Assembly: GCA_002269645.1 (NCBI GenBank)
Contig: NIVC01001475.1
Span: 186,001-250,000, forward strand
Origin: Macrostomum lignano
Lineage: Eukaryota
Direction of reading: 5' to 3'
Length of the DNA: 64,000 nucleotides
Below are positions 7,746 through 63,329 of this stretch, piece by piece. The notes beneath the pieces are model-generated. The model ran no database searches. It saw only the letters and a list, made by a program, of their open reading frames with translations, and was not told the DNA's origin. Within the stretch, counting starts at the first letter, position 1. The number at the start of each line of letters is the position of its first letter. The translations under genes were made by a program, and so were the position numbers.

Positions 7746-8494
7746 GCAAAAACTAAGCAAGCGAATCAGTGCGCAAGATGATGTGAGAACACTGGCTAGC
7801 GTGGAGGCTGGGCCGGTGTGGGTAGCACTAAGGAGTAGGAGAAGTGCACCAATAAACGCACATATCTACTGCCATGCACCATGCAGTGCACCATGCATGT
7901 ACATGCAGGTATATGGCCATGTAGCAACTGCTGGTCTACCAGTTCATTGATAGAATTGTATGAGGCGACCAGCTTCAGGGCGCAATGTGCTGGCTGGCCT
8001 CCGTGTGGCCTGTAGGTTGAACCAGTTGAGCACGTACATACATGAAGCTGCCGCAGTATGATCACCCCATTTACTTTTTAGAGGATCTGATGACCAATTT
8101 TTTAACTGACACCCACCAGCCTTTCAGAATTAGTTTTTCCGATCGTAATCAGACAAAGAAAGCTGTACATTCTAAATCAATTGCAATTATGGCTATATCT
8201 GTATAGCGTTACATGTACAGTAGTTGCGTGACAGCATGACCACGTTTACGAAATTTCACTGATGATTCGCCAACAATTCACTGCAGCAAATAAAACGAAT
8301 TATCATTCGTCATCCAGACACAGCGAGGCTGCAGCTTCTACATCCCGTGGCCAATGGTAGGTGCCGCATGGTCATCGTGCTTAGACTGTGAGATCCTACT
8401 TAAGGGACTGATCAATTACAGAAATGCTCAGCTGCAGAGTTTTCTAGCGGTCGGAAACACTATTCCGTTGATGAGATTAACAAACAGGTTTCAG

Positions 8495-9420
8495 ATGTCA
8501 ATCAGAGGTGCAGCCGGCCTTATTCTGGCGTTGGCTTGTCTCGGAATTGCTTCGTTCAATCCTGCCGCGGTCGATGCTCTCGAAGGTACACTGCGTAGCT
8601 CCCGATCGTAGTAGCTGCGTTAATATTTTTTTTCGGTAGAATTTCAGAAGCATGAGCATAATATTATATATTATAATCCAAATTTTCAGATACGGAACCA
8701 AATGCGGCCATTCAAAGCTTGGATGGACTCCCATTGAACCAAGTGAAGATTCCTGAAAGCGGAAAGCTGTTTGATCCAGACGAGAAGTCTTCTCTTCAGT
8801 GGGCCAGTGACAGCAAAAGAGGCCAGATCAACAACAAGAACGTGTTCAGGTGGGGCAAGAGAGACCGGACCAACAACAAGAACGTGTTCAGGTGGGGCAA
8901 GAGAGACCGGACCAACAACAAGAACGTGTTCAGGTGGGGCAAGAGAGGCCGGACCAACAACAAGAACGTGTTCAGATGGGGCAAGAGAGGCCGGACCAAC
9001 AACAAGAACGTGTTCAGATGGGGCAAGAGAGGCCGGACCAACAACAAGAACGTGTTCAGGTGGGGCAAGAGAGGCCGGACCAACAACAAGAACGTGTTCA
9101 GATGGGGCAAGAGAGGCCGGACCAACAACAAGAACGTGTTCAGGTGGGGCAAGAGAGGCCGGACCAACAACAAGAACGTGTTCAGGTGGGGCAAGAGAGG
9201 CCGGACCAACAACAAGAACGTGTTCAGGTGGGGCAAGAGAGGCCGGACCAACAACAAGAACGTGTTCAGGTGGGGCAAGAGAGACCGGACCAACAACAAG
9301 AACGTGTTCAGGTGGGGCAAGCGAGACCGGACCAACAACAAGAACGTGTTCAGGTGGGGCAAGAGAGGTCGGACCAACAACAAGAACGTGTTCAAATGGG
9401 GCAAGCGAGGATCTATTTAA
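8495..9420 (+). CDS. Neuropeptide precursor 1 with 14 -NVF(R/K)Wamide peptides; join(8495..8585,8690..9420)
   Basis: Exon 1 encodes a signal peptide (MSIRGAAGLILALACLGIASFNPAAVDA). A phase-1 GT-AG intron (8586-8689) joins it in frame to 14 x 42-bp units: GQINNKNVFRWG x1, DRTNNKNVFRWG x4, GRTNNKNVFRWG x8, GRTNNKNVFKWG x1. Each is flanked by KR and ends in a Gly amide donor. Confidence 0.93.
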
Positions 9421-11021
9421 ATCATAACTTCAGGTTAATATTTCGGTAAATAAATTCCAACGAACTATTGAGTAAATCTAAAGAAGAAAAGCTCCCATGC
9501 AGGATTGATCAAGACGAGAGTAAATCTCGCGCAAAGAATGTACGCCTATGACTTTTCACATTTCATTTCACGCCTAAAAGGATGCTCCTTTAATCAGATG
9601 GCCGTGTAAATCGAGTCTTTAGGGTATATCTTCAAAATATGTTTGCATGTAGTTCAGTATAAGCTATAAAAAGTGATTTCGAGGAAGGAATTAGAAACGA
9701 GTACACAGTAAACTAGCTATCCATCCATTAAATGCCATACACTGTCATATTTCGTCACAAAAACACTGCATAACAATCGAGCATGATGCGATGGAATTTG
9801 ATGAATTCCATATCGCTGAATGGCAATTAACTTCTCGCGTCGCTTTTGAACAGTCGGAAAAAACCCCAACTGTAACGACAGATTTGCATAGAAATCGATA
9901 TTTTACGATGGCAGTTTACATATTTATTGACACACGTGGAGTCTAAAATAGGACTATTTTACTGCTTACAGCCGTTCCTGGATCGTACCAGTTATAAATG
10001 AAAGAAAATATCCGTGATGCAACGCACTATATAGAAGCATCAAAGAAGCAAAATTCATAATTCATCTGGAGTCTTTTTTGTAAAACCTGATATTTGCAAA
10101 CTATGCTACTATTATGAGAACCTATAGATATACATCTAGATGAAGACAGATATAATTTAAAGTTTAATCATCTGCAGAGGGCCTGAGCCTATCTACACAT
10201 GCATGGTCAAAACTCGATTAGCTACGGTACGATACAGCGCCTTACCTCCATGGGTGCGCTCAGCTGGCGTACTAACCGCAGTGAAGTTAGTCTACATTTG
10301 AATTGTTTAGCTACTACACTAGCTACAATGCGGTATTTCGTGTTTAGTAGACAAAATGAAAATCAACTAGCTTATGGCTGCAATGCTATGACAACTGTAA
10401 TTTCAGAATCAATCTTTTTTAATTAAAGAATCCTTGATGCTGTTAGCTCGTACAATTAGGCTATAGCTAAACCTCTCGTTTGTGGTCATAAAAACGTGCG
10501 TGAATTTACAATTACAGGACTTCTGTGTATTCAAGTTACACGAAGTTTCTGGCGCCTATAGCAATTTGATTGCCTACAAACAAAAGCGAAAGGAAATTAA
10601 AATTGCCTACACTATCTATGAAGCTGTGGTTATGATTTTAAGTTTAAAGAGAGACTTTAAGAGAGAGAGAGAGAGAAACAGCCTCAAATAATTGTATGCT
10701 CTGTGTGACCGATTAAAATGCGTACATTAAAACAGAAAACCAAGCATATTGGATGCACGTCGCATGTACGTCGTATATACATGTAGTAAAAATCAATTGT
10801 GATGCAAGCACTAGACAGCAGGCGCCTACAATTCTCCCCAACCAGAGAGATCCCCAGGGGATAAAAAACAAGTTCAGTTACTCAGTTATCAGCTCAAATA
10901 CCCCAGAGCAATCAAAATGGCCCGTCCGCGCACGAAACCCCTAGGATCACAATTTGTAGCTGAGCACTCTGTTACTGGCAGCTCTTGGATGTTCTCGCGT
11001 GGCGATGCTACCGCTGGGTAG

Positions 11022-11450: not shown

Positions 11451-13374
11451 CTTCTTCTTCTTCTTCCATTCGGGCGCGCTCGGGGCAGGGCCCATGGCAC
11501 CGGGCGTCAGATGGCGCCCGCCTTCCGAGGAAGTTCAACACCGCGGTGCAGTACTCGAAAACTGCCGCGGGCTCCGGGCTTGGCCCCAAGAGGCGGCAGC
11601 GGTGTAATGTCAGGGCGGGGCAGGAGATCAGCAGATGGGCCGCCGTCTCCTCTCCATCGCCACAAAAGCGGCAGGTGGGGGCCACCTCAACGCCGATGGC
11701 GGCCTGGAAGCCCCGCAGGGCCGGGCTGGCAAATCAGCCGCTCCTGCCGCCGCGTGAGGTCGCTCGTCGGCGGAGGCGGCAGGCGGCCCGCCGTGCAGGC
11801 AAAGTGTCAGGTCAGGCTAGCGAGCTCGTGCTCGCCGCCTCGGTGGCCGCCGCGTTGTAGATCTAGTGTCAGCGGGCGAGGCAGTGGCGGCGGACGGCAC
11901 CCTGCGCAGCAGCCAACGCGACAGCTCTGCAGGGTCTGCGGCCGCGAGCACCCACCGGAGGGCCTCAGCGATGGCCACTAGCTCGGCGTGGAAACTGGAC
12001 GTCACGTGGCCAGCGTGATGTTATGCTCGACCAGGACGCCGCTGCCGCCGTCCAGGACGCCGTCCTTCGCCGCTCCGTCGGTCCAGAGCACGGTGCGGGC
12101 GGGCGGCAGGGCGGCGAGCGTCTGCTCCGCCGCAGCTCTCCGGGCCTCCGGCAGGTTCCCCCGCGAGGTTGGGGACTGTAGCCCGAAGGTGACGGAGTCC
12201 AGGTCAGCCCAGGGAGGTGTCGTCGGGACAGCGTGGACGGGCTCTCGCGAGTAACCGCCTAGGCCCGCAGCGCTGCAGACGCTGCAGACGCTGGCCGCCG
12301 TCTCGCGCTAGCCGCGGGCACTTTGGATGCGGCGCACTTTTTCGGCGCCAGCTCCATCCGCCACTCGCTCGCCCAGTCGGAGACCGCGTCGATCGCAGCC
12401 TGCGCCTTCGTCTCGGCCTCCTCCACGGTCAGGCCTTGCACTGCGATGCACTGCCTTGCAGTCGGACGGAAGGTGGTCAGGCAGGTCGTTGATGTACAGC
12501 GCAAAGAGCAGAGGGGCAAGGACACTCCCCTGTGGCAGGCCCTCGCGGAAGAGCCGCCAGCTGCTCACAGCGCGCCGTCCACCCTGACGGCAGCACGGCG
12601 ATCGGCCAGGAAGCTGCTGAGCCAGCGGACCCTGGCCGCTGGGATGCCGGCGTTGTGCAGCTTGTGGAGCAAGCCCTGCTTCCAGACAGGTCGCCCAGGA
12701 TCACCGTGTTGGCGCCGGACGGGAGGTGCTGGGGGCTGAAGCGCTGCACGCGGTCGTCTCCTTCGGCCGTTCTGATCGGCTGGATGTAGAGGCAGTGGAT
12801 GTCCAGGCTCTCGACGCTCTTTCAGACGGGAAACCCGGACGCCGGCCCACTCCGTGGTGACATCATCGGGGGCGCAGGGTCCCTCCTACAGCACCTCGAA
12901 GCGCAGCTTCTCGCGGATGAGGATTGCAACGCCTCCTCCGCGCGTGGGGCCGCCGGAGCGCCGGCACTCGGTGGCGCCAGATCGCGTTGAACCCCGGCAG
13001 GCGCGGATCCCGTCCCTCGGTGGTGTGGGTATCTTGCAGACACGCCACCTCGACGCGCAGGTCCAGCAGTTCGAGCATCTTCCTTCTGCGTTGAGTTGCA
13101 GGAGGTGCAGGCCACTGGGGGGCCGCGCGCGCGGACCGCCGGGTCGGGGGGCGCCTCGCGCCGCCGGGGGCCCGCCGTTGAGGCTCGGCGGGCTGGTTCA
13201 GGCGTCGGCTAGGCATTTCATCGGTAGGGTGGACGCCAGATGCCAATTGGGCGGCGAAGAGACTGCGTTGCGGTGCTGGGCCTCGGGAAGGGCCTGTTGC
13301 TGGCCTGCATTTCGTAGGCCTTGCGGGTCCTCCGGAGGGCACCTCGGGTAGGCGCAGGCCGTTGCTCTCCCGGA
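11451..13374 (-). mobile_element. Internally deleted LINE (APE-RT-RNase H-zinc knuckle, I-group-like) nested in the Gypsy integrase
   Basis: APE motifs (LHLLQLN, VACLQDTH, RGGGVAILIR, VILGDL) fused directly to RT (GLLHKL, PQGSVLAPLLFALYIND), then RNase H (LWTDG, SSFHAELVAIAEAL), CRFC..ETAAHLLISC and a (GAA)n tail at 11451-11466. TSD GACCAC at 11445-11450 and 13375-13380. Confidence 0.88.
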
Positions 13375-16300
13375 GACCACCTCGATCGGGACGCCGTATC
13401 TGCCGAACAGCCTCCGCAGGAGGGGGATCACGCTCTCCGCCGTCGTAGAGTTGAGGAAATTGACTTCTGGGTACTTGGGATACAAGTTGGTGGTGACCAG
13501 CAGCATCTGGCCCTTGCAATGGGCCGTAGAAATCCATGCCTAGCAGCAGCCAGGCACCGTTCGGAATATCCGTCGGCGTCAGTGGTGTCTGTCGCAATCC
13601 GGTGGCCGCAGCCTGGCACAGTGTGCAGCAGTGGACGAATAGCTCGGAGTCGCTGCACATCCGAAGCCACCACACCTTCGTCTGCAGGCATTTAAAGGTG
13701 CAGTCGGCGCCTAAGATGACCGGTGTGCTCCAGTTGAAAGATCGGCCTGTGCAGCGACTCGAAGATGATGATGAGGTCGCCGCGGAGTAACACTCCGTCG
13801 CTTTCCGACAGCTCGCCGCTGATGGACTTGAAGGAGCGCTGGGCTGCCGCTCGCGTATCCCAGCGGCCGGTTCGAATTGCGTTCATCGCCGGTGCGCGAT
13901 GCTTCCGGAACCTGGTCGAGACTGAAGCCTTTCGGCACGGCCCCGGTCGACACGGGGTTGGCGAAGGCGGCGTCGAGCTCTTCACCGACATTCTGGACGC
14001 CGTTCTCGCAGTGGCTGCCGACTCAGCAGGTCAGCCTGGTTGGTCGAGCCTGGCCGGTAGAGCAGGTTGAAGCGGAGATGCTGAATGCGCAGCGCCATTC
14101 GCTCGATCCGCGGTGGCGGACGGGAGCCAGGCTTAAAAAGCGGCACGAGCTGTCGGTGGTCCGTCACCACGGTGAAGTCTGGGTCGCCAGCCAGATAGTG
14201 CTCAAACTTGAGATACCCAAATTTGATGGCAAGAGCCTCCCGCTCGATCTGCGCGTACCGCTGCCCCACCGGCGAGAGGGCTCTGCTGGCGTAGGCAAAA
14301 GGTCGGCAGCTACCGTCCGGCTGTCACTGTGAGAGGATGGCGCCGACGCCGATCGGAGATGCGTCCACCAGGAGCTCCATGTGCTGCCTGCGGTCGAAAA
14401 AGGCTAGCGTGTCCGCGTCTGAGATCGCCTTCTTGATGCCGTCAAGCGCCGCAGTGTGTTTTTCTGTCCACTCCCAGGCCTGGCCCTTCTTCGTCAGCTG
14501 CCGGAGTGGGGTGGCGAGGACAGCGAAGCTCGGTATGAACTTTGCCAGGAAGTTCGCGGTTCCCAGGAAAGAGCGGACGTCGGCCACGTTGGCGGGCTGT
14601 CGGAAGTTCTGCATGGCGTCAATTTTCTCGGCGGCCGGCTGCATGACCCGGGCGGTCAGGCGCATTCCGAGAAACTCGACAGTAGACGTGGCGAACCTAC
14701 ACTTGTCCTGATTGAGGGTGATACCGACCTCTCGGAGGTGCTGAAGGCAGGCGTCCAGCCTCTCATGGTGCTGCTTCATGTCGGAGGCGTAACCCATCCC
14801 GTCATCGTGCGCCCACCGGACGCCGTCAATGCCGCTGAAGATGCCAAGCGTGACTCGTTGAAGGATTTTCGAGGCATTTGTGAACCCCATACTGAGCCTC
14901 TTGAGCCGCATCAGTCCGAGGGGCGTGCTGAAGGTGAAGAGGTGACGGCTGCTCTCGTGAACTGGGATCTAATAAAAGGCCTTCCGGATATCGAGTTTGC
15001 TGAACAGCTTGGCGTCGGCCATTTCCTCGGTGATTTCATCCAGCGTGGGGATTTGCTTCTTCTCTGGGATGACGACAGTGTTGAGATCGCGGAGGTCCTG
15101 GTATATATTCTGACGCCACCGTCACCCTTGGGCACCACCACCATGTGTGACACCCGGGCGCTAGGACTTTTGACTGCCTCGATGCTGCCCTGCTTCTCCT
15201 AAGCCTTGAGCTCCTTCACTACGACCTCTTTCAGGTGCGCCGCCACACGTGAGGGCTCCTGGAAGACAGGAACAGCATCCTTGGACAGCTGGACCTGGAC
15301 CTCTACACCCTTGATGCAGCCGATGCCGTTGGAGACTTATTTGTGCCTCTTCAGGATGGCCTTGAGCTGCGGGACACTATACTGCTTGAAGGGTATGCTG
15401 TCGACGATGGCATTCTTGTTTTGCGGCTTGATAGCTTCAGGTCACTGGATCTTCAGCACTCCTAGCTTGAATGCGGGCTGGCGCCCAAGTATCGTCAGCC
15501 CGTCGCCGTCCATGATGTGGAAGGTCGCTGTTGTTTTGGCAGCTGTGAGAGGTGTCGGAAACTCATTATGCTGCAGCTGGCTCCGCTGTCAATCATTATA
15601 GGAAGCTGCCGGTTTGCCACCTGCACAGTCAGCGAGACGTCGGATGGTTATTTGTCGTGGTTGTACAGCGCGAACACGTCCGCGTTGACGGAGCTGTCGG
15701 CAGCTGTGAAGACAGCATTGGTGCAGATTCGCTGTTGTGGGGTCCGGCTGCTGTTTGACTGCCGAGGCTGACGGCAGGCAAAGCGAGGTGGTTGTACTTG
15801 CCACAGTTGTGGCAGATCTTGCCTTTTGCTGCGTCGCAGGTGGTGTGGCCTTTCTCGCCGCAGCGGTAGCAGGTTGCGCTGCTGCTGGTTGCTAGGCCAT
15901 CTGCTGGTCATCTGAGCCGGGCCAAGCCTGTCTGTCTACCTTGTCGCCCTTGGCAACGCTGGCCACCTGCGAGTCTGCCTTCTCCATCTCGGTGGCTTGT
16001 TCCTCCGCCTGATGTTTGCCTCCTGCGCAGCTTGTCAGAGCTGCAGGTTGCCACGAGCTGGTCTCTGATGAGCGAGTCCTTCAGCTGCTCAAAGTCGCAC
16101 GGCTCTGCCCAGTGCGCAGTCTGGCGTACCAGTACTCGAAGGACTCTCCAGTGGCCTGTGTGCATAGGCGGAACTGATAACTGGCGAATACTATTCTTTC
16201 TTCTGTCTTCAAAGCGTCCAGGCGTCTACCTGAAGGTGACTTGGCCGTCCTAGCTGTGCTCGCTGCAGGCTTGGCATCCTCGCGTATGATATCGGCGATT

Positions 16301-17373: not shown

Positions 17374-19452
17374 TGATGGGTTCGGCCTTTTAAGCCTGTA
17401 GCTTCGGGCCTCAGAACTCAGAAATGAATCGCTAAGAGCTCTGGCCTCTCACTCCTGTCAGATGGTCAGCCTCATGGTAGCTAGATTGTGGGCGAGCAGC
17501 AAGGTCCTATAGCTAGGAGAAGACAGCGAGAGACAAGCAGGGAGAATTTGAAAGGTAGAAATTAGCTAATCCGCAGATTAACTAACTCGCTGCCACCAGT
17601 CCGTGCGCCCCGGCTCACCAAACCGGAGCTATCGAAATCGGACTTCCGACTAGAGGGGCACTGCACTTACCTGCCATCTAGTGTCTTTTAGCTGTCTAAA
17701 TCTCGAAGTCATAGCCGAATAGAAGGGACGCTGCTGGGACTAAGATCGCATTGGCCATGCAGGGACAGAGAGGACTTTTGCAGGGGGTTCTTGCGCTGGC
17801 AAGCCTTCATACACTACTAAATGTACTATTTCATGACCGAATTCCCAGAAGTACATGTATAAGTACACGTAACTGCACGCTCTTGGCACTAAATGTGTTA
17901 ACCCTTCGACAGATAGCGATGATGTAGATGCATTGTCACTTTCGGAGATCTTTAGACTAATATTTAACTTACTTTAGCCGCTTAACTGCCTGTGACCGCG
18001 CCAAAGCGCCAGTCTGGCTCTTAATTTGCATGCTTAACATAATGATTTCTTAGATTGACTGGTTGACTGGGAACTGTGCCGCTTCCGGTCCACCGTGACC
18101 TCTGCCTCTAGATTTAGCCGCTCATCTCAGCTGGCATTGCGAAAAAGAAAGAAAACGCTAAGTCTTTAACTTTCAAATTTAACTTTCTCACTTAATCCGC
18201 AATCCTAAACACTTTAGATTGAGTTAGAGCAAATGGCTACTTTTAATATTAACTGACACTGCTGCCTCGAGATTGGCACACAAAAGCAAGTAAGCAAAAG
18301 TGCAAATCCTATCAGACTACCTAGGAAGGGGTCAGACAAAGGGTGCACCCAGTTAAGCAGGTCAAGAGAGCCTCTCACCAAACCAATCAGAGGACCTATC
18401 TGCCGGTAGCCAAGGAATCCACAGAGACCGAAGCGCTCAGATGGGATGCTGCTGCTGATCTTGACTGACGATTGCCGCCGCTGCTCTTCGCTTGCCTAGT
18501 CGTTGCTGCTCTTAGATGACTGCCGGGAGATGTTAATGATGCCTCTCAGGGGAACTTAGCTGTTGAAGCCGAAACTGCCGGGGAAAGGGGGATCAGGACG
18601 GCAGGACCAGAAGGGGAGGACCAGGGTCCGATCTCCAGTATGGCCGGGGAAAAGGCCAGGTAAAACCGCCAGGGGAAAACCGAGCGCGGGTCGAGTTGCC
18701 GCCTTATATAGATCTCACGCGGCCGATTTGTTATAACGCACGCCGAATTTTCCGATTGGCTGAGAGCTTTTGTTAAAATAGGCGCCGAATTTTCTGATTG
18801 GTCGAGCCGGGGGCAGTCAGGTCGACTCTGATTGGCTGAGCTCAAGACCCCAAAACCCACCCCACCAGGTGGCCTTCAGACCCGGTTGCATTCATAACAT
18901 AATAAACGACAGGCCCATTCAGCAAAACGCCGGGGAATTTTCCAGACGAGAATGCTAGAATCTGAAAAAAAACATAGACGGCCATCACTGAGACTTGTAA
19001 GCTCAAATCCAAAACCCAACCAAGGTACATTGACTATTTACAGTGTGCATATAGTATAATTATAGCAATGTAAGAAAGTAGTCTACTGACATAGGAAAAT
19101 CAGCAAAACGTAACTCAAATAAACAACACCAAGAAAGCTAAAGACCTCTTTGACCCAGACACTGTTTCCAAAAGTGACAGCTAGACGGCATAATCACTGA
19201 AACAAAAAAAGCACAAATTGCAGAACGATTTCTAAAACGTTCCTTATTTAGACTTTAGGTAATCCGTTCAAACGACAGCTGACCTTTCACGTAAACAATA
19301 AAATTGAAAAAGTACATTCGACTATTTATCATAATTATAGCATGGCACTTATTTAGCTGAAGAGAATGGAAAAAATCCTAAGCTACCTACTGACAGTAGG
19401 AAAAGCTAAAGAAAAAACGTTAGTTTAAAAAGATTAAACTTTGCGTGGATCA
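17374..19452 (-). mobile_element. Solo LTR A (~2.08 kb), CTCT TSD
   Basis: Begins TGATGGG and ends ATCA; CTCT at 17370-17373 and 19453-19456; blocks of homology to the element at 20978-22890. The right boundary is less certain than for LTR B. Confidence 0.7.
18700..18842 (-). promoter_or_regulatory. LTR promoter: three CCAAT boxes plus TATA, firing leftward
   Basis: The minus strand has three CCAATC motifs spaced ~35-40 bp apart, followed by CTATATAAGG near 18705-18712; the same layout occurs in LTR B. Confidence 0.55.
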
Positions 19453-20977
19453 CTCTGTTATATTTGCGTTGTTGTATGCAAAAATCCTTCTAAATTATCT
19501 CTATTTATCGTTTCCTTAGAATAACCTCTCTTGTAGGATCAGCTAATGCAGCGTTAAGAACTGTATTAATTAAATCCGGAAAATAGTGGCGTTTACTGGG
19601 ATCAAGGGTGTCCAGCGGTAGGCTCCTAATCTTCTAACACCTTCACGGTTTCTTTTAACGCCTAATGCCTAGCGCCTAATCTTAGCCTTCACGGCTTATG
19701 TACATCGATTCTTCACGACTTCAATCTCCTTCAATCTCTCTATCTGAGTCTGCACGACTTCGATGTCCCTATTCTCCCTCAAGGTCGTGGTCCTTGATTT
19801 CTATTGTGTGTGTGTGTGTTTCACGCACTGAAATTTACTGAGCTTTCACGCCTCTTCGCTTCACGCTTTTTGAAATAACAAAAAGATATATATTAAAATT
19901 GGAGGAAAATTCACCAAGACAAACGGTTATAACGTTTACTTTCTGCCCAGGGGGCCTTTATAAAGATTTCATAGTTCACAGCTATTAGCTGAAGCGAAAA
20001 TTAAAAAAAATTACCAGGTTTATAACAAATGGATGTTTTAACAAATACGAAACGTTTTATACCAAAAAAACTAAAGAAATTCGATCAGTATTAGTATTAC
20101 CCAAAAATGATGTTCTGGCAGCCAAATAACTTTTGCGCGGGTATCTGATTTTTTACTGCCCACCATGGATGACTGTTTTTGAAATTCTATTGACAGGAAC
20201 TTAATTATCACTACGCAAAACGAGCGGCAATTTGCGCAGAATAGGCACTTTTCAAATGATATATAAATTTTCTAGCGTCAGTCAAAAACCGCTTAGCAAT
20301 ATCCAACCACTACAGCTTATAATATACGTGAAAGGATCCTTACGAAAAACAGGCGAATGGAAAATACCTGCAAGTAGCTAAAAATCTTGCAATAGATGTA
20401 GAGCAAGACCTACATGATGTAAATGTGCTACAGCGGAAAGTTCGCTACTGTACGCGCAAGTCGCGTTATGGGGTCGGCCATCATAAACCCGAAAAATCAA
20501 AACTTCCAAAGCACTTCCCTATCATCATTCCTATCAGAAAAGCTCGTTAAATTTTTTCTGGAAAATCAAGTGAGCAAATTTAGCCTTAAGACCTAAATTG
20601 TGTCAAAATTAAAAAATTCCTAGAAATTATTTGCGTTAAAAAACGCAATCTCGCAGGCAGCTAGTAAAATGCACAGGCAGATCAAATCTGATACACATGG
20701 TAATCCAGCGAACGATTTCTGAAGAAAATGTATCGAAAATGCTTAGACAAAAAATCAATCGCAGCGATATAGATCTTAATAAAAGCTGTTGTAGCTTGTT
20801 GAACCAACAATTTCTTAAAACCAAATGATATACGAAGCTGTTTCTACATACTGTGGCCAATGTTAATCTCCAGTACACGGTCATTTTGATGCTTAGACAG
20901 TGCGATCATATATTACGTTGATTAGATTAACAAGCAGCTTTTTCAGATGTCAATCAGAGGTGCAGGCGGCATTATTC

Positions 20978-22890
20978 TGATGGGTTTCGACCTGGGCTCC
21001 TTGTTAGGAAGCCTTCGGGCCTCAGGCCTCAGAAATGAATCAATTAGAGTCCTGGCACTCCTGTCAGATGGTCAGCCCCATGGTAGCTTGATCGTGTGGC
21101 GAGCAGTCTAGGTCCTATAGCTAAGAGAGGGACAGCGAGAGACGAGCAGGGAGAATTGAAGGTAGAAATTAGCTAATCCGCAGACTAAAGCTAACTCGCT
21201 GCCACCAGCCCGTGCGTCCTGACTAGACACCGGCTCTCTCCTGCCAACTAGTGTTTGCTGTCAATCTCGAAGTCATAGCCGATGATAAGGGACACTGCTG
21301 GGACTAGATCGCATTGGCCATGCAGGTACAGAGGGGATTGGCAGCAGGACAGTGGGGAGACATGGGGCTACAGTACTAGCTAAATACGAAATACGGCCTT
21401 CCTTCGCGCCAACTAGCCTCTCATAGCGCTGATGATAGACTAACTCGAACTTCAGAGACCGCATGATTCATTACCCGAGCCGCTTGGCTAACCTAGAGTG
21501 CACAAAGTACATCTCTGGCGCCGATTCTGCACTTCTGGCAGTTTTGCTCACTGATTTGGTAGATTGATCGACTGAGAACCGCCTTGCCATTGGTCCACTG
21601 TGACCGGCGCCTACTAGCTTAGCTACTCATCTGAGCCATCGGCGAACAAAGAAATAAAACCGATAAAAATAACTGTTAGATTTAACCTTCTCCTTAGATC
21701 ACTTCGCACTTCAGATTGAATTGGAGTTTCAGACTACTAGTAGTATTATTAAGTGATTTCTGCCTCAGTAACAGCACTACTGAACAAAATGAGCAAAAGT
21801 GTGCGCCTAATTCAGCTACTGAAACAGGGGACAGATAGGGGATCACCCAATCAAGCAAGTCTAGGTAGCCTCTCACCCAACCAATCAGAAACTCAACAGC
21901 CGGAGACCAGGAAATCCACAATGACCAAATCGGCTTGATGCTTCGCAGCTGTAGACTCGGGATGATGCTGACACAATCTTCGCTGATAGCTAGCAGGTGA
22001 TGATCTTCGCTTGATGTTCGCTGCTGACGACCGGGGGACTCGTCCTTGATGATGATGGGGGGAAGTCGCAATCCGGGGATCAAGAAACGACGGTCGCGCT
22101 CCGGGAACCAGAAGTTGCGTGCTGGACCCGAGCAAGAGTAAGATGCGTCCGAGCGGGCCAAAAACTCCGGTTTAAATAGCCGCCAACTGGACCGCAGTTT
22201 GTTATAACGGAACACGTCGATTCTGATTGGCTGAGCCGTTTTGTTAAAATGAGCGCCGAATTTTCTGATTGGCTAAGCTTGTTGCTACCCAGAATCACGT
22301 GACCAAGAGATCCTATCAGTTCCCACAGGGTCGTAGAAAGATGACAGGTGCGGCCATAAATCACTCAAAATCGCAACAAAATGATTTATGACTTTTCGCG
22401 TAGGATTGACAGAAATTAATGAAAAAATATACATTAGAAAGCTCTTATTAAATAGAAAGTGAAGATAATGAAGAGAAATTGCTAATCACTAATCCCAAAG
22501 TACTTTTAGGGGTAAAACGCATAGCTGTCAAAGCTGTCACACGCTCGAGTGAATCCGAACAATAGGCTCTGACCTCATAAATCTTGATGGCCTGTCAAAA
22601 TGATGAGAAAAAAGCTACCGCCCGCATCCTCTCAGACCATCTGGCGCCCGTCTCAACACTGAGTGAGGCGCAGGTGGCCGTCAGACCAACTTCGGAAGCG
22701 ATGATTTACGACCCAAAAAGCTACGCCTATGTTATTATGACTACTAGTATGGCCAGACATTATATCTAGTATAGATTCTATGACAATTTGCAGAAAAAGG
22801 ATAAAAATGCCCATCGCCCACTGTTAGTAGGCTAGTAAGTTTAGAGCCCATGTGCTAGCGCGGGATTTGGGAAAAAGTGCGTCCTCATCA
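20978..22890 (-). mobile_element. Solo LTR B (1913 bp), TG...CA ends, 4-bp TSD ATTC, inside the signal-peptide exon
   Basis: TGATGGG...CCTCATCA; ATTC at 20974-20977 and 22891-22894; the flanks rejoin into sequence colinear with gene 1 exon 1. Confidence 0.88.
22168..22280 (-). promoter_or_regulatory. LTR B promoter: two CCAAT boxes plus TATTTAA
   Basis: Minus strand GCTTAGCCAATCAGAA, GCTCAGCCAATCAGAA, then CTATTTAAACC; homologous to 18700-18842. Confidence 0.5.
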
Positions 22891-24236
22891 ATTCTGGCGT
22901 TGGTTTGTCTCGGAATTGCTTCAGTCCATTCTGCTTCTGCCCCACGCGATGCTCTGGAAGGTAGGCGCGCTACCGAAACGTTTTTTTAACCTAATTATAC
23001 TTTTGAATAGTTGAAGATCGAAATTCAGTCAAATAAAACCTGTAACTTTATGCACTTACTTTCCGTTAGTGAACTAAGCGAGGCCACTCAAGGCTTGGAT
23101 TGGGCTCCCATTGAACCATGACGAGACACTTGTTGGAAGTGAAAAGCTGTTCGATGCAGATGAGACGTCTTCTCTTCACAGGGCTAGTAACAGCAAGCGA
23201 GGCCGGTCCAGTTCCGGCAACGTGTTCCGATGGGGCAAGCGAGACTACGGCAACGTGTTCCGATGGGGCAAGCGAGACTACGGTAACGTGTTCCGATGGG
23301 GCAAGCGAGACTACGGCAACGTGTTCCGATGGGGCAAGCGAGACTACGGCAACGTGTTCCGATGGGGCAAGCGAGACTACGGCAACGTGTTCCGATGGGG
23401 CAAGCGAGACTACGGTAACGTGTTCCGATGGGGCAAGCGAGACTACGGCAACGTGTTCCGATGGGGCAAGCGAGACTACGGCAACGTGTTCCGATGGGGA
23501 AAGCGAAGCTGAGTTCGGCTGGGGCAAGCAAGGAATCTATTCAAATTATAACTTGGGGACAAATATTTTGTCAAATAAATGCGAATAATCACCGAGATGA
23601 TCGAGTAAAACTTGTGCAAAAAAGGTGCCTGTAAGACTTCCGCTTCTCATTTCAAGCTATACATGCACTTAAGGCTGATTCACTCTGCCAGCGAATGAGC
23701 CATTAAATCACACACGACCTATATTTACAGTCGGGATCCCACCAAATTTGGTCTTATTTGAAGCCGCGCCGATGTGAAGTCCTGATGTTTTTAAAGTTCT
23801 CTCTAATAATAAAACCAGTAATCGATGCAAGAAAATATATACGAAAGGAAACTCACTAGAGGAACGTCAAAGGAGCCGTTCGACGCCAAGTGGCGTACTG
23901 AATAAGCTAATCTGAATTCCAACGTGGCAGTAGCTATAGAAAGGGTTTGCAGTGTGTAAAACTTGACATACGAGCGTAGACATCTTGTGATCACTGTGAA
24001 AATGTATGAATATAATTGAAAGGATTTTTCTTATCTGCAGATGGGCTTTCGATGGTCAAAACTCAATTAATTAATCTTTTGAAATTTTTATCCTGCACAA
24101 CTTCTATAGGTTGTTATTAAAGTCGTTAGATAAACCTACAGCTACTGTTCCTGTTCATGACAAAGTTACTACCAGAGAAACTAACAAGTGTGGTATATTG
24201 AGGTAAATAGGGGTTGAGCCAATAGGAGTTGCAGGA

Positions 24237-27564: not shown

Positions 27565-29848
27565 CACCATTTTACCCTCGCTTTTGAACAAACTCCGTTT
27601 CACTTTAGACAGTCGGAACTTCAGTTTAGACACTTTTAGACTGGAGCCCCGAATCTACATTCACTATCAACAAACTTTGTTTCAGTATCGACAGCTAAGC
27701 TTTGTGGTGCTACACTTCTATCTATTTACATAGGCAAGTAAGGAAACGCACATCCAGATCTAGGCGAAACTCCCTTTCACTTTCGACAAACGCCACTTCT
27801 TAAACAGTCTATGGTCTAAGCTGCTGAAACTCCGTTTCACTTTAGTCAACCAACATTCAAGATAGACAAGATACATTCACTTTAGACATGAACTCACACG
27901 GGAGGTGTGCAAAGGTTTCTTAAGCATGTTCATGGAAATTTCCAAGGATAAAAACTTTCATTGTAACGGAAGATGGCGTGCAACGAGGATTTTTTTATCA
28001 ATAAACAGTTAGTTTGGCGGCCTAATTTAAAAGGCATTTGAGAATGCAGGACTGTTCCGAAAAAAAATTGTTTAACAGCGTCGTGATTAAAACGGCAAAG
28101 CCAGCAGAAGCGAAACGATAGTTCAGCGATGGGTTCTGATTTCCATTAGCCATCAATTGGCTGAGACGCCAAGCACCGTGGCAGATACCTGAAGCAATGG
28201 CTGAGCCACCGTGCCACCTCTGGAGTGATGCAGTTGGCGGTGCCGTCCACCTCACGGAGTAGAATGTCTCGGCGGTACGCCGCCAGGCTGCGACCAGCAA
28301 GCTGCTGCTCGGTCGGCCTGATGAAGGAATCTTGGATCGCCGACAGTCGACGCTTCAGAGCCGCCTTCCAGCATGATATCGCGTTCTCAACTTGGGTGAG
28401 AAATGGGCTGTAGGGTGGCAGTCGTCTCACTTCCACAGCGTCTTCGACCTCGTAGCTTTCGGCGTCATTGTGGCTGCTGACGTTGTCTATGACAACACTG
28501 ATGCTGCTGTCCGGAAACACGCTGTGGAAGTTGGCGATTGTGATTGTGAGAAACTCGCCGAATCTCTCCTTTGTCATGCCGCTGTCGTATGACTGGAAGT
28601 GCACGATTCCAGCAGCCGGGCTTACTGCCAGGCAGACGGTGATGCGCTGTCCCTTCTGTCCAGAAACCTGTCGGTAACACGCACTGTCCACGAAGAGATC
28701 GTCCATAGGATCGCCGCATCCATGTGTTGAAGACAAACTCGTCAATAAATATCTTCTCTGTGTCAGATGCTTCGGGCGAGCACATCCACTGAGCAAATTG
28801 CTCACGAGCGGCTACAACCCTTGGCGAGTTGCGCTCAGCTGGAAGATCTCGTGCCAGCTTCGTTGTGAACAGTGCACCGTCGAGTTTTATGCTCAGTGTC
28901 TTTTCTGAGACATGCTGCTTCTCAGGAAAAGCTTGTCTGAGCATGGTGTTCATCTCTTTCAGAGTCAGCAATGGATTCTGCTCCACGATTGCGCACAAAT
29001 ATTCTTGCATCTCACCATCCCACTTCACATTCTTGGCTCCGCCGCACGAAAGCTTCTCCACTCGTCCACTCCTCACAATTGAATATGCGGTCGTTCTTTT
29101 GATGTCTGCAAGTTGAGAGGCCAGTAGGATAAAATCTTCACCCTTCTGGTAAGTGGAGAGAAGTCGCTGCATGCCTGTCATGGTTGCTCACTGGCTGTCG
29201 CTGTTGCGCTGGAGCCTCGTCTTCAAAGTCGCTTTCACTTTCGTCTTCGTAACCAGGCTCCTCTTCTAGGTACGAATCTTCACTGCCCTCCATCTTTTTC
29301 AGGGCTTGCTTTAGCGAATATCTTTAGCGAATAGGCTTCAGTGTTTGGAGCGAAGGGAGAGTAGGCTGAGACTTTGGTTTGGAACTTTGGTAAGGTCTGG
29401 CCGGCGACCCTGCCACCCCACACTGTTCAAAGGGGTGAAAAGGGTGTCTTAAAAGGTATCTATGGTCAAAACCCCTCTTTCAGCCAACATTAGGCGTAAA
29501 CAAATGACGCATCTAAGAATCTGTCTAAAGTGAATGTATCTTGTCTATCTTGAATGTTGGTTGACTAAAGTGAAACGGAGTTTCAGCAGCTTAGACCATA
29601 GACTGTTTAAGGAGAAGTGGCATTTGTCGAAAGTGAAAGGGAGTTTCGCCTAGATCTGGATGTGCGTTTCCTTACTTGCCTATGTAAATAGATAGAAGTG
29701 TAGCACCACAAAGCTTAGCTGTCGATACTGAAACAAAGTTTGTTGATAGTGAATGTAGATTCGGGGCTCCAGTCTAAAAGTGTCTAAACTGAAGTTCCCA
29801 CTATCTAAAGTGAAACGGAGTTTGTTCAAAAGCGAGGGTAAAATGGTG
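27565..29848 (-). mobile_element. IS630/Tc1-superfamily DNA transposon with ~325-bp TIRs and TA TSD
   Basis: 27565-27888 is nearly the exact reverse complement of 29522-29848; TA at 27563-64 and 29849-50; internal direct repeats AACTCCGTTTCACTTTAG. Confidence 0.95.
28146..29293 (-). pseudogene. DDE transposase with two frameshifts
   Basis: HTH (QRLLSTYQKGEDF...KRTTAYSIVR), FIDE, VIDNVSSH and LPPYSPFLTQVEN motifs; a 4-nt insertion near 29170 and a 1-nt shift near 28680. Confidence 0.88.
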
Positions 29849-33309: not shown

Positions 33310-33818
33310 CAGGCCCTAGGCCTTAAATGCATCATATATGCATTATGCTATTTAACGCAATACACTAGGCACAAGCCTAAAGCAAATTTATTAATCATAC
33401 TCAGGACAGGGCAAGGCACACCGAATGTCCTACCCAGCAGGCAGCAGCCCAGAGTCTGAAAATTTAAGTAAATTCGACTTACTCGAAGGTCTGGCTATTA
33501 ATTGCTTTCGAAGAAAATCAAGGAAATCATGTGATTCAACCTCACCATATACGCGAACTATTTTATCCTACTTAAATCAGTAGTAGCACCAGCATAAGCA
33601 TTGAAAAAATACTAAGAAAAATTTCCCGTGACTTAATTTTTTTATCGAGCCAGAAGATCTGAATCGGTTTTCGTAAACTTTTTTACTACCTAATTCGGAA
33701 AAAAATATCTAAAAATCTTAGCGCTCGACAGTAGCAGTTAATGCGCTCGTGTCGTGCTCGTGACTTTCTGAAATTATTTTGTCTCCCCTTCCCTTTTGAC
33801 TCTGCTGTTATGTATATA

Positions 33819-33951
33819 ATCTTTGTCTGTTCTTTTGGTTCCTATGGCAGAGAAAGGCCGAGGACGCTGTTCTCAGGCCGAGGCGAAGCCGAGGCCTTAG
33901 AATTGCGTCTGAGGTCTTTCTGCCATAGACACCAAAAGAACAGACGAAGAT
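33819..33951. mobile_element. Short hairpin MITE (~40-bp TIR containing CTATGG/CCATAG)
   Basis: ATCTTTGTCTGTTCTTTTGGTTCCTATGGCAGAGAAAGGCC / GGTCTTTCTGCCATAGACACCAAAAGAACAGACGAAGAT. Confidence 0.8.
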
Positions 33952-33964
33952 CGTACTTAATCTA

Positions 33965-34625
33965 CAGATATTGGAAGCGACTGGGAGTGGGAGTGAGGTA
34001 TTCGTCAAAAGCGGGGGTGTGGTGGCGCAGCCCCCCACATTTAACCATAGACATAAAAATTAAAGTAAAAGATTCGATGCTTAAATTAAAAGCGAGAAAG
34101 GAAAGGTTTGGGCAGCTTGGGCACACCCCAGATCATGAGCGCTGCCTTCCGTGCATTTATAAAATCTACGACGGCTACCGACCGGAGCAATGTAAGCACG
34201 ACAACCTCTTTCTGACTTGGTTTCGAAGTGAGTCTGCCATTAAGAGCGACAGATGGTACAAGAATGGACCTATCGGCCGGCATACTCTCGACTCCATTGT
34301 GGCGAATATCACCAAGCCCGTGTCTACGGATGGTAAATTCTCAAACCAGTCTCTAAGGAAGACTTGTGCCAGCACGTTGCATCGGGCTGGACTGGCTAGG
34401 GACGATATAGCCCGCGTCACTGGACATTCGTCCAACGCTATTGAGAGGTACATACGGCTAGACGTCCAGGACCATTCGCGTATGACCTACGCTCTACACG
34501 CCGGAGGAGCCGTGGAGTCCAATGGGCGGACCAATGAGCAAGATGTCGTGTCTGAAGGTACTACCAAGAAGATGCGCATGACTGTCCACGGTGACACCAA
34601 CACCGTAGAAATCATGTTCGAGTGA
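33965..34625 (+). CDS. Tyrosine recombinase catalytic domain, Crypton/DUF3504-like (5' end uncertain, possibly partial)
   Basis: RC..IYKIY...RP...LFL...WYKNGPIGRHTL...FSNQSLRKTCASTL..AG....IARVTGHSS..IERY matches the HxLR / GH / Y box of Crypton-type YRs, with His replaced by Gln. The listed ORF's N-terminus runs through a MITE. Confidence 0.8.
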
Positions 34626-40882: not shown

Positions 40883-41863
40883 ATGACTCGTCATCGAGAA
40901 ATTGAGCTGATTTTTGCCCTAGTCATCGGGTTGATCCTACATGCACCTGTTCGTAAGTTTCTATTTGTAGCGCTGTCGTATACTCACTGTACCTGCATTC
41001 TACTTTACAATGAAATTTGATCGATTTAACTTTAAAAATTACGTTTAAAAATTTTAGTATCTCAAGAGCCACCGACTGCCACCGCTACGATTGAGACAAG
41101 TAGCATTGACGCTGTAAAATCTTCAGTTGGTGACTCTGCCACCACTTCAGGAGTGGAACTGTCTGGTGGCAGCAGCACAGCTGGTACTGCCACCACTTCA
41201 GGAGTGGAACTGTCTGGTGGCAGCACAGCTGGTACTGCCACCACTTCAGGAGTGGAACTGTCTGGTGGCAGCACAGCTGGTACTGCCACCACTTCAGGAG
41301 TGGAACTGTCTGGTGGCAGCACAGCTGGTACTGCCACCACTTCAGGAGTGGAACTGTCTGGTGGCAGCACAGCTGGTACTGCCACCACTTCAGGAGTGGA
41401 ACTGTCTGGTGGCAGCAGCACAGCTGGTACTGCCACCACTTCAGGAGTGGAACTGTCTGGTGGCAGCAGCACAGCTGGTACTGCCACCACTTCAGGAGTG
41501 GAACTGTCTGGTGGCAGCACAGCTGGTACTGCCACCACTTCAGAAGTGGGCTCATCCAGTAGCACATTGTCTAAAGACAGCACGTCATCACCACCGTGTG
41601 CATCAACAACTCGAAAAGACTGCAACTGCCACAAGATGACACCTGGATCGCTGCGGTTGGAGAATCACAATCTCTGGTCAGCTGTTATCGGCTTGGCCAT
41701 AACCTGCTCTCTACTAGGTGTTGTACTGGTGGCAGCTATCATATTTATTATTCTCATGCGTCGAAGATTTGCCAATCAAATGCCGATTCGCCGGGGCAAG
41801 AACAAGTACGGATTTCGATTCGCAACTCCGGCGACTATGGACTTTTCGCATGGACAAGTTTAA
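40883..41863 (+). CDS. Type-I membrane mucin/proteoglycan-like protein; join(40883..40952,41058..41863)
   Basis: Signal peptide MTRHREIELIFALVIGLILHAPVLS; phase-1 GT-AG intron; 8 copies of ATTSGVELSGGS(S)TAGT; a short Cys cluster; TM helix (VIGLAITCSLLGVVLVAAIIFIILM) followed by RRR; short cytoplasmic tail. Confidence 0.8.
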
Positions 41864-44242: not shown

Positions 44243-50463
<6,221 letters not shown>

Positions 50464-63282: not shown

Positions 63283-63329
63283 GTAGAGCAAGGGGGATTG
63301 TGGAGTGGATGTTTTTACATTGAGCCCTT

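What the first reader, a model, noticed from the sequence alone, without database searches (positions are those of the whole stretch)
8495..9420. Intact multi-copy -NVFRWamide neuropeptide precursor
Seen: a signal peptide, an acidic/neutral pro-region, and 14 KR-flanked, Gly-extended peptides ([G/D]RTNNKNVFRW-NH2 plus variants). Established: KR cleavage with Gly amidation is the prohormone convertase/PAM pathway; the cestode FaRP GNFFRFamide and sea-anemone Antho-RWamides are known. Inference: NVFRWamide looks like a flatworm FaRP (xxFRFamide) whose terminal Phe became Trp, possibly an uncharacterised RWamide family. Internal R and K could yield shorter forms such as NVFRWa.
Basis: partly seen in the sequence, partly recalled or inferred. 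Interest (0 to 1): 0.75.

Follow-up and report, generated by a model that had tools for sequence, protein, structure and literature searches.

The report
Flatworm NVFRWamide neuropeptide precursor gene
This is a real, intact two-exon gene for a secreted precursor carrying 14 copies of a short amidated peptide ending in NVFRW; it belongs to the flatworm Macrostomum lignano, and its main peptide was already named, synthesised and tested in a 2022 paper, so it is genuine but not new.

Summary
ATG 8495, exon 1 8495-8585, GT-AG intron 8586-8689 (phase 1), exon 2 8690-9420 give a 273-aa protein. It has a hydrophobic N-terminus, an acidic spacer (pI 4.05) and 14 contiguous KR-flanked, Gly-extended copies: 8 GRTNNKNVFRW, 4 DRTNNKNVFRW, 1 GQINNKNVFRW and 1 GRTNNKNVFKW.

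The peptide GRTNNKNVFRWa is printed in Dandamudi et al. 2022 (PMC9234716) as a product of Macrostomum lignano propeptide Mlig032062.g1. It was applied there to three M. lignano DEG/ENaC channels without response. So the flatworm guess was right and the novelty is largely gone.

New here:
- A tandem paralog 12.5 kb downstream (DYGNVFRWamide x8) is split by a 1911-bp insertion in its signal-peptide exon.
- A third M. lignano gene elsewhere (Mlig026077.g1, xSGVFRWamide) has its intron at the same place and phase.
- The only other FRWamide-type precursors found are annelid ('FRWamide' of Urechis, Capitella, Paralvinella). They carry a four-Cys motif that the flatworm genes lack.
- Annelid sNPF/RYamide precursors also carry one or two xFRWamide copies.

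Receptor and function remain unknown. Interest is modest.

The parts
8489..8494 (+). TTTCAG directly before the ATG; matches the M. lignano spliced-leader trans-splice acceptor motif [T/C]TNCAG. Possible trans- or cis-splice acceptor (inferred).
   Evidence: Sequence. The motif and the 35-nt SL ending in ATG are from PMC8629364. The same TTTCAG|ATG is found in gene B.
8495..8585 (+). Gene A exon 1 (91 nt, ends in phase 1): MSIRGAAGLILALACLGIASFNPAAVDALE plus the first base of an Asp codon; signal peptide.
   Evidence: Homologous exon 1 in gene B and in Mlig026077.g1.
8586..8689 (+). Intron, 104 nt, GT...AG, phase 1, splitting a G|AT Asp codon.
   Evidence: Same position and phase in gene B (donor GT at 22961) and in L003/L004 (intron 110 nt, G|AC).
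8690..9420 (+). Gene A exon 2: acidic spacer, first KR at 8815-8820, 14 peptide units, then GSI and the TAA stop.
8821..9408 (+). 14 x 42-bp units, each encoding an 11-residue peptide plus G-K-R.
9449..9454 (+). AATAAA polyadenylation signal 29 nt after the stop.
   Evidence: Conserved in gene B at 23574-23579.
20947..20979 (+). Gene B exon 1, 5' piece (ATG TCA ATC AGA GGT GCA GGC GGC ATT ATT CTG), preceded by TTTCAG at 20941-20946.
   Evidence: 88% identical to 8461-8527.
20980..22890 (.). 1911-bp insertion splitting gene B exon 1. It is flanked by a 6-bp direct duplication ATTCTG (20974-20979 and 22891-22896) and related to 17402-18801.
22891..22960 (+). Gene B exon 1, 3' piece (starts with the second ATTCTG copy); donor GT at 22961.
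23079..23512 (+). Gene B exon 2 if the TAAG|CG acceptor is used. It encodes a spacer, GRSSSGNVFRW-GKR (23201-23242), 8 x DYGNVFRW-GKR (23243-23506), then Ser and TGA. A's CAG acceptor is CCG in B, and the TAG acceptor at 23069 gives an in-frame TAA.

Best explanation
Gene A (8495-9420) is a functional neuropeptide or peptide-hormone precursor of Macrostomum lignano. It is the same gene as, or a near-identical copy of, gene model Mlig032062.g1.

Inferred pathway:
1. The N-terminal signal peptide takes the protein into the secretory pathway.
2. A PC2/PC1-type prohormone convertase cuts after each of the 15 Lys-Arg pairs.
3. A carboxypeptidase E-type enzyme trims the K and R.
4. Peptidylglycine alpha-amidating monooxygenase (PAM) turns the exposed Gly into a C-terminal amide.

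One translation therefore yields 13 copies of x-x-x-NNKNVFRW-NH2 (8 with G-R-T, 4 with D-R-T, 1 with G-Q-I) and one GRTNNKNVFKW-NH2. The invariant C-terminal NNKNVFRW-amide is the likely receptor-binding part.

The receptor is unknown. A rhodopsin-type GPCR of the RFamide/Wamide-activated groups is the most likely kind.

Shown: the sequence architecture, the splice logic, conservation in paralogs, and identity with a published peptide. Inferred: processing, amidation, neuronal expression and receptor class.
For: - Architecture and counts.
- Frame, between genes: gene A and gene B keep NVFRWGKR although both Arg codons differ (AGG/AGA against CGA). These changes are synonymous only in this frame.
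- Frame, within gene B: all 3 variable sites are synonymous in this frame and non-synonymous in the other two.
- Frame, within gene A: residues 4-9 and 11-14 of the unit never change. Variation sits in residues 1-3 plus one R to K.
- Unit length: the units are 42, 33 and 27 bp in the three M. lignano genes, always multiples of 3.
- Splicing is obligatory and the phase-1 intron splitting an Asp codon is shared by all three genes.
- An AATAAA follows the stop in both A and B.
- Literature: GRTNNKNVFRWa 'from Macrostomum propeptide Mlig032062.g1' (PMC9234716).
- Precursors with xFRWGKR copies exist in M. lignano (P0167) and in annelids, including Urechis FRWamide. [quoted passage not shown]
Against: - No transcript, peptide mass-spectrometry or expression data for this gene could be examined here.
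- The signal peptide was judged only by hydropathy and the -3/-1 rule.
- Upstream in-frame ATGs (8354, 8471) leave the start uncertain.
- The one functional test in the literature was negative: no response of three M. lignano DEG/ENaC channels.
- The paper says AYGSMPWa comes from the same propeptide, but no ...MPWG[KR] coding sequence exists anywhere in the window. Either the gene model is not this locus or the statement is loose.
Confidence: 0.85

Rival explanations
1. Ancestry variant 1. The M. lignano xVFRWamide genes are orthologs of the annelid 'FRWamide' precursor, so FRWamide is an old spiralian family.
For: - The only other precursors dominated by (V/I/L)FRWGKR copies are annelid-type: Urechis FRWamide P0004, Capitella P0005, Paralvinella P0168, and the unnamed P0001-3, P0006 and P0157.
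- Some copies are literally ...NVFRWGKR (P0002, P0003, P0168).
- An FKW variant copy occurs in both groups.
Against: - Six aligned annelid-type members (P0001-P0006) share an invariant C-x3-C...C-x-C motif in the pro-region. Gene A has one Cys, inside the signal peptide, and P0167 likewise.
- P0001 and P0002 are encoded without an intron, whereas the flatworm genes have a phase-1 intron.
- Similarity is limited to a 4-7 residue repeated motif.
- E-values for such periodic queries are inflated. Unrelated proteins score 1e-63, and FMRFa, LRFa and myomodulin precursors score 1e-8 to 1e-13.
Confidence: 0.25
2. Ancestry variant 2. They are derived sNPF-type (spiralian RYamide/LFRFamide) or flatworm FaRP-type peptides in which the C-terminal Tyr/Phe became Trp. 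This is.
For: - Annelid RYamide precursors carry one or two (L/I/V)FRWGKR copies among xFRYGKR and xFRFGKR copies. These include Platynereis F8UKT9 (P0161), Owenia P0173, Paralvinella P0124, and P0007, P0008, P0087 and P0099.
- These RYamide precursors are now regarded as sNPF (PMC8557429).
- So W, Y and F interchange in this motif.
Against: - No copy in genes A, B or Mlig026077.g1 ends in F or Y.
- The conserved C-terminal ...PHVPFRFG(D/E) peptide of those precursors is absent.
- M. lignano has a separate FMRFa/YMRFa propeptide, Mlig001796.g3.
Confidence: 0.2
3. The product is a secreted peptide that is not neuronal, for example from gland cells (defence, adhesion, reproduction, pheromone). 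It would use the same convertase and amidation machinery.
For: The sequence alone cannot tell the cell type. Multi-copy KR/G precursors also make non-neuronal secretory peptides in other animals (general knowledge).
Against: - Short, basic, aromatic-amide peptides of 8-11 residues with an invariant C-terminus are typical receptor ligands.
Confidence: 0.07
4. It is a non-coding 42-bp minisatellite that happens to be open in several frames.
For: - Three forward frames and one reverse frame of the array are open.
- The window is full of mini- and microsatellites.
- Within gene A, the synonymous/non-synonymous count does not separate frame 0 from frame 2 (7/7 each).
Against: - An in-phase signal-peptide exon and a canonical intron.
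- KR and Gly at every unit.
- Synonymous-only differences between paralogs in this frame alone.
- Three paralogs with different unit lengths but the same peptide core.
- A published gene model.
Confidence: 0.02

Closest known systems
Macrostomum lignano propeptide Mlig032062.g1 and its peptide GRTNNKNVFRWa (Dandamudi, Hausen & Lynagh, J Biol Chem 2022, PMC9234716)
   Same: The commonest unit of gene A (8 of 14) is letter for letter the published 11-mer.
   Different: - The paper gives no description of the gene, its copy number or its paralogs.
- It groups the propeptide loosely with 'Wamide' propeptides.
- It attributes AYGSMPWa to the same propeptide, which this window does not encode.
- I could not confirm that this locus carries that gene ID.
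M. lignano BOX15_Mlig026077g1/g2 (PAA47094.1, PAA62704.1, UniProt A0A267ENZ8), annotated only as a hypothetical protein
   Same: - Signal peptide, acidic spacer, KR, then contiguous xSGVFRW-GKR copies.
- Exon 1 of 88 nt against 91 nt in gene A.
- A phase-1 intron of 110 nt against 104 nt, splitting an Asp codon.
- ATGTCAA start.
   Different: - Shorter peptides (7 residues).
- 27-bp unit.
- Unrelated spacer sequence.
- Located on other contigs.
Annelid FRWamide precursor (Urechis unicinctus, GenBank MT162138; PMC7737342)
   Same: Several (V/I)FRW-G-KR copies on one precursor, with amidation and dibasic sites. Profile and single-sequence searches retrieve each from the other.
   Different: - It has a four-Cys motif in the pro-region, acidic spacers between copies, and heterogeneous N-termini.
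- P0001 and P0002 have no intron.
- It was described as Urechis-specific, which searches show is not so: Capitella and Paralvinella have it.
Spiralian sNPF / RYamide / LFRFamide precursors (e.g. Platynereis F8UKT9)
   Same: Short xFRx-amide peptides, with occasional xFRWamide copies on the same precursor.
   Different: Mostly FRYa or FRFa copies, and a conserved terminal PHVPFRFG peptide. Neither is present here.
Flatworm FMRFamide-like peptides (GNFFRFamide, YIRFamide family), recalled from general knowledge
   Same: Flatworm origin, short, aromatic-Arg-aromatic-amide C-terminus.
   Different: They end in RFamide. The precursors known to me carry few copies. No sequence comparison was made here.
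Cnidarian Antho-RWamides and ambulacrarian luqin-type RWamides
   Same: C-terminal Arg-Trp-amide only.
   Different: - Antho-RWamides are pyroGlu-blocked LRWamide pentapeptides.
- Luqin precursors carry one copy plus a C-terminal Cys pair (PMC5940834 and PMC7041311 were listed but not read in detail).

Membership tests
Amidated multi-copy neuropeptide precursor (convertase/PAM substrate) | N-terminal signal peptide | tested here: met
   basic MSIR, a 15-residue hydrophobic core, and small residues at -3/-1 for sites after A19, S20 or A28. This is a heuristic only; no SignalP.
Amidated multi-copy neuropeptide precursor (convertase/PAM substrate) | Dibasic cleavage sites on both sides of every copy, and Gly before the C-terminal site | tested here: met
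   15 KR pairs; W-G-K-R is invariant in all 14 units.
Amidated multi-copy neuropeptide precursor (convertase/PAM substrate) | Mature amidated peptides present in tissue; expression in neurons or endocrine cells | not testable with these tools
   No transcriptome, peptidome or expression data for M. lignano were reachable.
Annelid FRWamide precursor (Urechis type) | Several copies ending in (V/I/L)FRW-Gly-KR | tested here: met
   13 NVFRWGKR copies plus 1 NVFKWGKR.
Annelid FRWamide precursor (Urechis type) | Invariant C-x3-C ... C-x-C motif in the pro-region | tested here: not met
   invariant in the 6 aligned members; gene A has a single Cys, at position 15 in the signal peptide. P0167 also lacks the motif.
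Annelid FRWamide precursor (Urechis type) | Sequence similarity outside the repeated motif | tested here: not met
   the aligned stretches are the xFRWGKR repeats only. One search shows that periodic GKR alone gives strong E-values.
Spiralian sNPF / RYamide / LFRFamide | Copies ending in FRYamide or FRFamide | tested here: not met
   every copy ends in W.
Spiralian sNPF / RYamide / LFRFamide | Conserved last peptide ...PHVPFRFG(D/E) | tested here: not met
   Searches show it in P0007, P0008, P0066, P0087, P0099, P0124, P0161 and P0173. Gene A ends ...KRGSI*.
Spiralian sNPF / RYamide / LFRFamide | Activation of an sNPF-type receptor | not testable with these tools
   Needs a receptor assay.
Flatworm FMRFamide-like peptides | C-terminal Arg-Phe-amide | tested here: not met
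   Arg-Trp (once Lys-Trp) before the Gly.
Wamide / MIP superfamily | C-terminal Trp-amide | tested here: met
   The JBC paper appears to group this propeptide with the 'Wamide' propeptides; the assignment is my reading.
Wamide / MIP superfamily | Second conserved Trp upstream (W-x5-8-W) or a GLW-type ending (from general knowledge) | tested here: not met
   there is one Trp per peptide, preceded by Phe-Arg.
Luqin-type (RWamide in ambulacrarians) | Single peptide right after the signal peptide and two Cys near the precursor C-terminus (from general knowledge) | tested here: not met
   14 copies and no C-terminal Cys.
Ligand of FaNaC-related DEG/ENaC channels | Gates a peptide-gated sodium channel | not tested
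   Published negative result for Mlig049925.g2, Mlig051885.g1 and Mlig041003.g1 (PMC9234716). Other channels are untested.

The most novel reading that the evidence does not exclude
xVFRWamide is an old spiralian peptide family, shared by flatworms and annelids and distinct from sNPF and FMRFamide. It would have its own still-orphan receptor. M. lignano would have expanded it to at least three genes: NVFRWa x14, DYGNVFRWa x8 (now transposon-split) and SGVFRWa.
Probability: 0.25. Interest if true: 0.45.

Novelty: already known. Interest (0 to 1): 0.27.

Why it matters
Macrostomum lignano is a transgenic, RNAi-amenable flatworm model, and very few flatworm neuropeptides have known receptors or roles. 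A gene that releases 14 near-identical amidated peptides per translation is likely to be an abundant signal, and is an easy target for antibody, in situ, RNAi and GPCR-deorphanisation work.

The small additions made here give a concrete comparative question rather than a new kind of system. They are a three-gene family with a shared intron, a transposon-split tandem copy, and a link to annelid FRWamide and to the FRWamide copies inside annelid sNPF precursors. As a discovery its value is limited, because the peptide is already in the literature.

Tried and rejected
- Rfam and tRNA scans of the window found nothing. The M. lignano SL sequence is not in the window.
- An innexin exon used to place the organism gave only 38-42% hits, one of them a cestode. 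It was uninformative. Proteins of the window's own clusters are probably hidden.
- Exhaustive phmmer with exon 2: the top hits are unrelated long repeat proteins (P0012, 3119 aa, E 1e-63), junk translations of repeats, and other xxxGKR-periodic neuropeptide precursors. I therefore do not treat the E-values as evidence of homology.
- Pfam has no family for the precursor.
- McVeigh et al. 2009 (PMC2749192) and Wasik et al. 2015 are not held. An earlier listing of this peptide among flatworm 'npp' genes cannot be excluded.
- Collins et al. 2010 (planarian peptidome) has no RWamide in its main text.
- The JBC supplement held as text does not contain the propeptide sequence.
- megablast and blastn of the window against two M. 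lignano contig pieces (L003, L004) found no shared repeats, only the FRW repeat itself. Species identity therefore rests on the exact peptide match, not on DNA identity.
- Splicing out the 1911-bp insert of gene B as an intron was considered. No boundary pair keeps the frame, by hand inspection of the sequences.

Full report

Yes, to the base. The window reads ATG at 8495 and a 91-nt first exon to 8585. A GT at 8586 opens a 104-nt intron ending TTTTCAG at 8689, and the second exon runs from 8690 to a TAA at 9418-9420. The joined CDS is 822 nt, or 273 aa.

Tandem Repeats Finder reports one array at 8813-9410: period 42, 14.2 copies, 96% matches, no indels. In the reading frame set by exon 1 the array is 14 units of 11 residues plus Gly-Lys-Arg, occupying 8821-9408. 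They are 8 GRTNNKNVFRW, 4 DRTNNKNVFRW, 1 GQINNKNVFRW (first) and 1 GRTNNKNVFKW (last). A KR precedes the first unit.

The N-terminus is MSIR followed by a 15-residue hydrophobic core, with small residues at -3/-1 after A19, S20 or A28. The spacer is acidic, with pI 4.05. An AATAAA lies 29 nt after the stop.

**2. Is it more than a repeat that happens to be open?**

The caution is needed. All three forward frames and one reverse frame of the array are open, and the window is rich in minisatellites. Four things fix the frame.

- **Splicing is obligatory.** Unspliced, exon 1 runs into a stop at 8609-8611. Exon 2 contains no ATG in frame before the repeats. Only the GT-AG splice in phase 1 joins a start codon and a signal peptide to the array.
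- **A second gene shares the core.** Gene B, 12.5 kb downstream, has 33-bp units encoding DYGNVFRW-GKR (x8), preceded by GRSSSGNVFRW-GKR. Between A and B the core NVFRWGKR is identical. Both Arg codons differ (AGG/AGA against CGA), and these changes are synonymous only in this frame. Within B all three variable sites are synonymous in this frame and non-synonymous in the other two.
- **Variation within A is patterned.** The synonymous/non-synonymous count alone does not separate frames (7/7 in two frames). All amino-acid variation falls in the first three residues of the peptide, plus one conservative R to K. NNKNVF-W-GKR never changes.
- **A third gene keeps the same structure.** An M. lignano gene on other contigs, BOX15_Mlig026077g1 (P0167), has 27-bp units encoding xSGVFRW-GKR. 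Its exon 1 is 88 nt and its 110-nt phase-1 intron splits an Asp codon. In gene A the figures are 91 nt, 104 nt and G|AT.

So there are three unit lengths, all multiples of three, one peptide core, and one intron position.

**3. Whose gene is it, and is it known?**

A full-text search for the peptide letters found one relevant paper. [quoted passage not shown] The oocytes expressed three M. lignano and two Phoronis DEG/ENaC channels of the clade next to the FMRFamide-gated channels. No response was seen.

The 11-mer is identical to the commonest unit of gene A, so the window is almost certainly Macrostomum lignano. The window's 44.8% GC and its heavy repeat load are what I would expect from that genome, though I did not check a published GC figure. 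Innexin exons at 61.8-63.3 kb show it is an invertebrate animal.

I could not confirm the gene ID for this locus. The window also contains no ...MPWG[KR] coding sequence. Either the paper's 'both' is loose or the model lies at a paralogous locus of this recently duplicated genome (PMC10468722).

No paper in the held library describes the gene, its copy number or its relatives. McVeigh et al. 2009 could not be read.

**4. The neighbour, gene B.**

The 5' end of A (8461-8527, including the ATG) matches 20911-20979 at 88%. The rest of exon 1 matches 22891-22963.

Between the two pieces lie 1911 bp (20980-22890) flanked by a 6-bp direct duplication, ATTCTG. This stretch is related to another stretch of the window, 17402-18801. 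Joining the flanks gives MSIRGAGGIILALVCLGIASVHSASAPRDALE, a clear homolog of A's exon 1, with the donor GT in the same place.

In addition, A's CAG acceptor is CCG in B. The next AG gives an in-frame TAA, and an AG nine bases further restores the frame.

B is therefore best read as a recently inactivated tandem duplicate. Its repeat array is still perfectly open. An insertion present in only one haplotype or homeolog cannot be excluded.

In both A and B the ATG is directly preceded by TTTCAG. This is the motif enriched at M. lignano spliced-leader acceptor sites, and the 35-nt leader itself ends in ATG (PMC8629364). Trans-splicing at 8494/8495 is thus plausible but untested. It would also dispose of the upstream in-frame ATGs at 8354 and 8471.

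**5. Relatives elsewhere.**

The word-indexed search with exon 2 found eight proteins. Six are precursors dominated by (V/I/L)FRWGKR copies. Among them are 'FRWamide [Urechis unicinctus]' and a hypothetical protein of Capitella teleta.

The Urechis paper (PMC7737342) named FRWamide in 2020, called it Urechis-specific, and showed expression in the region of the larval apical organ. A profile of the six found further members, in Paralvinella and in unnamed contigs, and also found the M. lignano protein P0167.

All six aligned annelid-type members share an invariant C-x3-C...C-x-C motif in the pro-region. P0001 and P0002 are encoded without an intron. The flatworm genes have neither the cysteines nor the intronless structure.

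A second group of hits is the annelid RYamide precursors: Platynereis F8UKT9, Owenia, Paralvinella and others. These are now regarded as sNPF (PMC8557429). They carry one or two xFRWGKR copies among xFRYGKR and xFRFGKR copies, and they end in ...PHVPFRFG.

The exhaustive phmmer run shows how little the E-values mean for such a query. The best hit is an unrelated 3119-aa repeat protein at 1e-63. FMRFamide, LRFamide and myomodulin-like precursors score 1e-8 to 1e-13, the same range as the FRWamide precursors.

What is specific is the tetrapeptide (V/I)FRW before GKR, and no more. Orthology with annelid FRWamide, derivation from an sNPF- or FaRP-type peptide, and independent origin in Macrostomum all remain open. 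I give them roughly 0.25, 0.2 and the remainder.

**6. How it most likely works.**

The sequence shows a secretory precursor with 15 Lys-Arg sites and a Gly before each C-terminal site. The rest is inferred from the well-established pathway:
1. Signal peptidase removes the signal peptide.
2. A prohormone convertase cuts after each KR.
3. A carboxypeptidase E-type enzyme trims the K and R.
4. PAM amidates at the exposed Gly.

This gives 14 amidated 11-mers per protein, whose invariant part is NNKNVF(R/K)W-NH2. Whether the single R and K inside the peptide are also cut, giving TNNKNVFRWa or NVFRWa, cannot be told from sequence.

The receptor is unknown. The three DEG/ENaC channels tested were silent. 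A rhodopsin-type GPCR of the RFamide/Wamide-activated groups is the obvious candidate class (PMC8557429), but that is inference.

**7. Verdict.**

Its evolutionary guess (FaRP with F to W) is neither shown nor excluded.

Its hope of novelty is mostly removed by its own criterion. The precursor is a catalogued gene model, its main peptide has been synthesised and tested, and the name FRWamide already exists for annelid relatives.

- the gene structure;
- a transposon-split tandem paralog;
- a third family member with the same intron;
- the finding that 'Urechis-specific' FRWamide is in fact present in several annelids;
- the defining four-Cys motif that the flatworm genes lack.

Interest is therefore modest.

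Noticed in passing
window 20947-23512 (+): A second NVFRWamide-type gene (GRSSSGNVFRWa x1, DYGNVFRWa x8, 33-bp units). Its signal-peptide exon is split by a 1911-bp insertion with a 6-bp ATTCTG target duplication, and its CAG splice acceptor is changed to CCG.
   Followed up: yes
L003 and L004, 10001-10560 (GCA_002269645.1, NIVC01004577.1 and NIVC01001908.1): A third M. lignano FRWamide-type gene (BOX15_Mlig026077g1/g2, annotated as a hypothetical protein) encoding GTTFRWa plus (P/Q)SGVFRWa copies. The genomic copy has 8 repeats where the deposited protein has 6. Its intron has the same position and phase as in gene A.
   Followed up: partly
window 17402-18801 and 21013-22277: Two diverged copies (68-83% identity) of an unclassified repeat. 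One of them is the insert in gene B. No terminal inverted or long terminal repeats were seen.
   Followed up: partly
window 61818-62174 and 62662-63333 (+): Two exons of an innexin gene (Pfam PF00876, E 7e-16 and 2e-25). The best database relatives are only about 40% identical, one of them from the cestode Dibothriocephalus latus.
   Followed up: partly
window 12863-15202 (-), GC 59-67%: A GC-rich retroelement remnant with reverse transcriptase and RNase H domains (14324-14911), lying between genes A and B.
   Followed up: partly
window 28146-29181 (-): A Tc1/mariner-like transposase (HTH plus a DDE_3 domain) split over two overlapping frames, so probably frameshifted.
   Followed up: partly
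window 33741-34625 (+): A 294-aa ORF with DUF3504 and phage-integrase-like (tyrosine recombinase) matches, as in Crypton-type elements or their domesticated derivatives.
   Followed up: no
window 45305-45709 and 47474-50371 (-); 41153-41863 (+): Very long Ser/Thr/Pro/Ala-rich repeat ORFs (965 aa) ending in EGF-like Cys patterns. Nearby is an exon with an EGF-like motif followed by what looks by eye like a transmembrane segment. They look like mucin-type single-pass membrane protein genes. A second repeat ORF with a similar hydrophobic segment lies at 41.2-41.9 kb.
   Followed up: no
window 8354 and 8471 (+): Two in-frame ATGs upstream of the proposed start, with no stop before 8495. Use of 8471 would still give a signal peptide. 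Use of 8354 would bury it 47 residues in.
   Followed up: partly
P0176, P0187, P0185 (unnamed NCBI/JGI/Logan proteins): Other precursors with 3-5 copies of GTPFRWGKR, GTLFRWGKR or (V/I)PFRWGKR and no four-Cys motif, from unidentified organisms. FRWamide-type peptides may be wider spread than annelids and Macrostomum.
   Followed up: partly
PMC7737342: The Urechis paper calls FRWamide unique to U. unicinctus. Clear orthologs with the same Cys motif exist in Capitella teleta (CAPTEDRAFT_185359) and Paralvinella palmiformis (LSH36_284g01002).
   Followed up: yes
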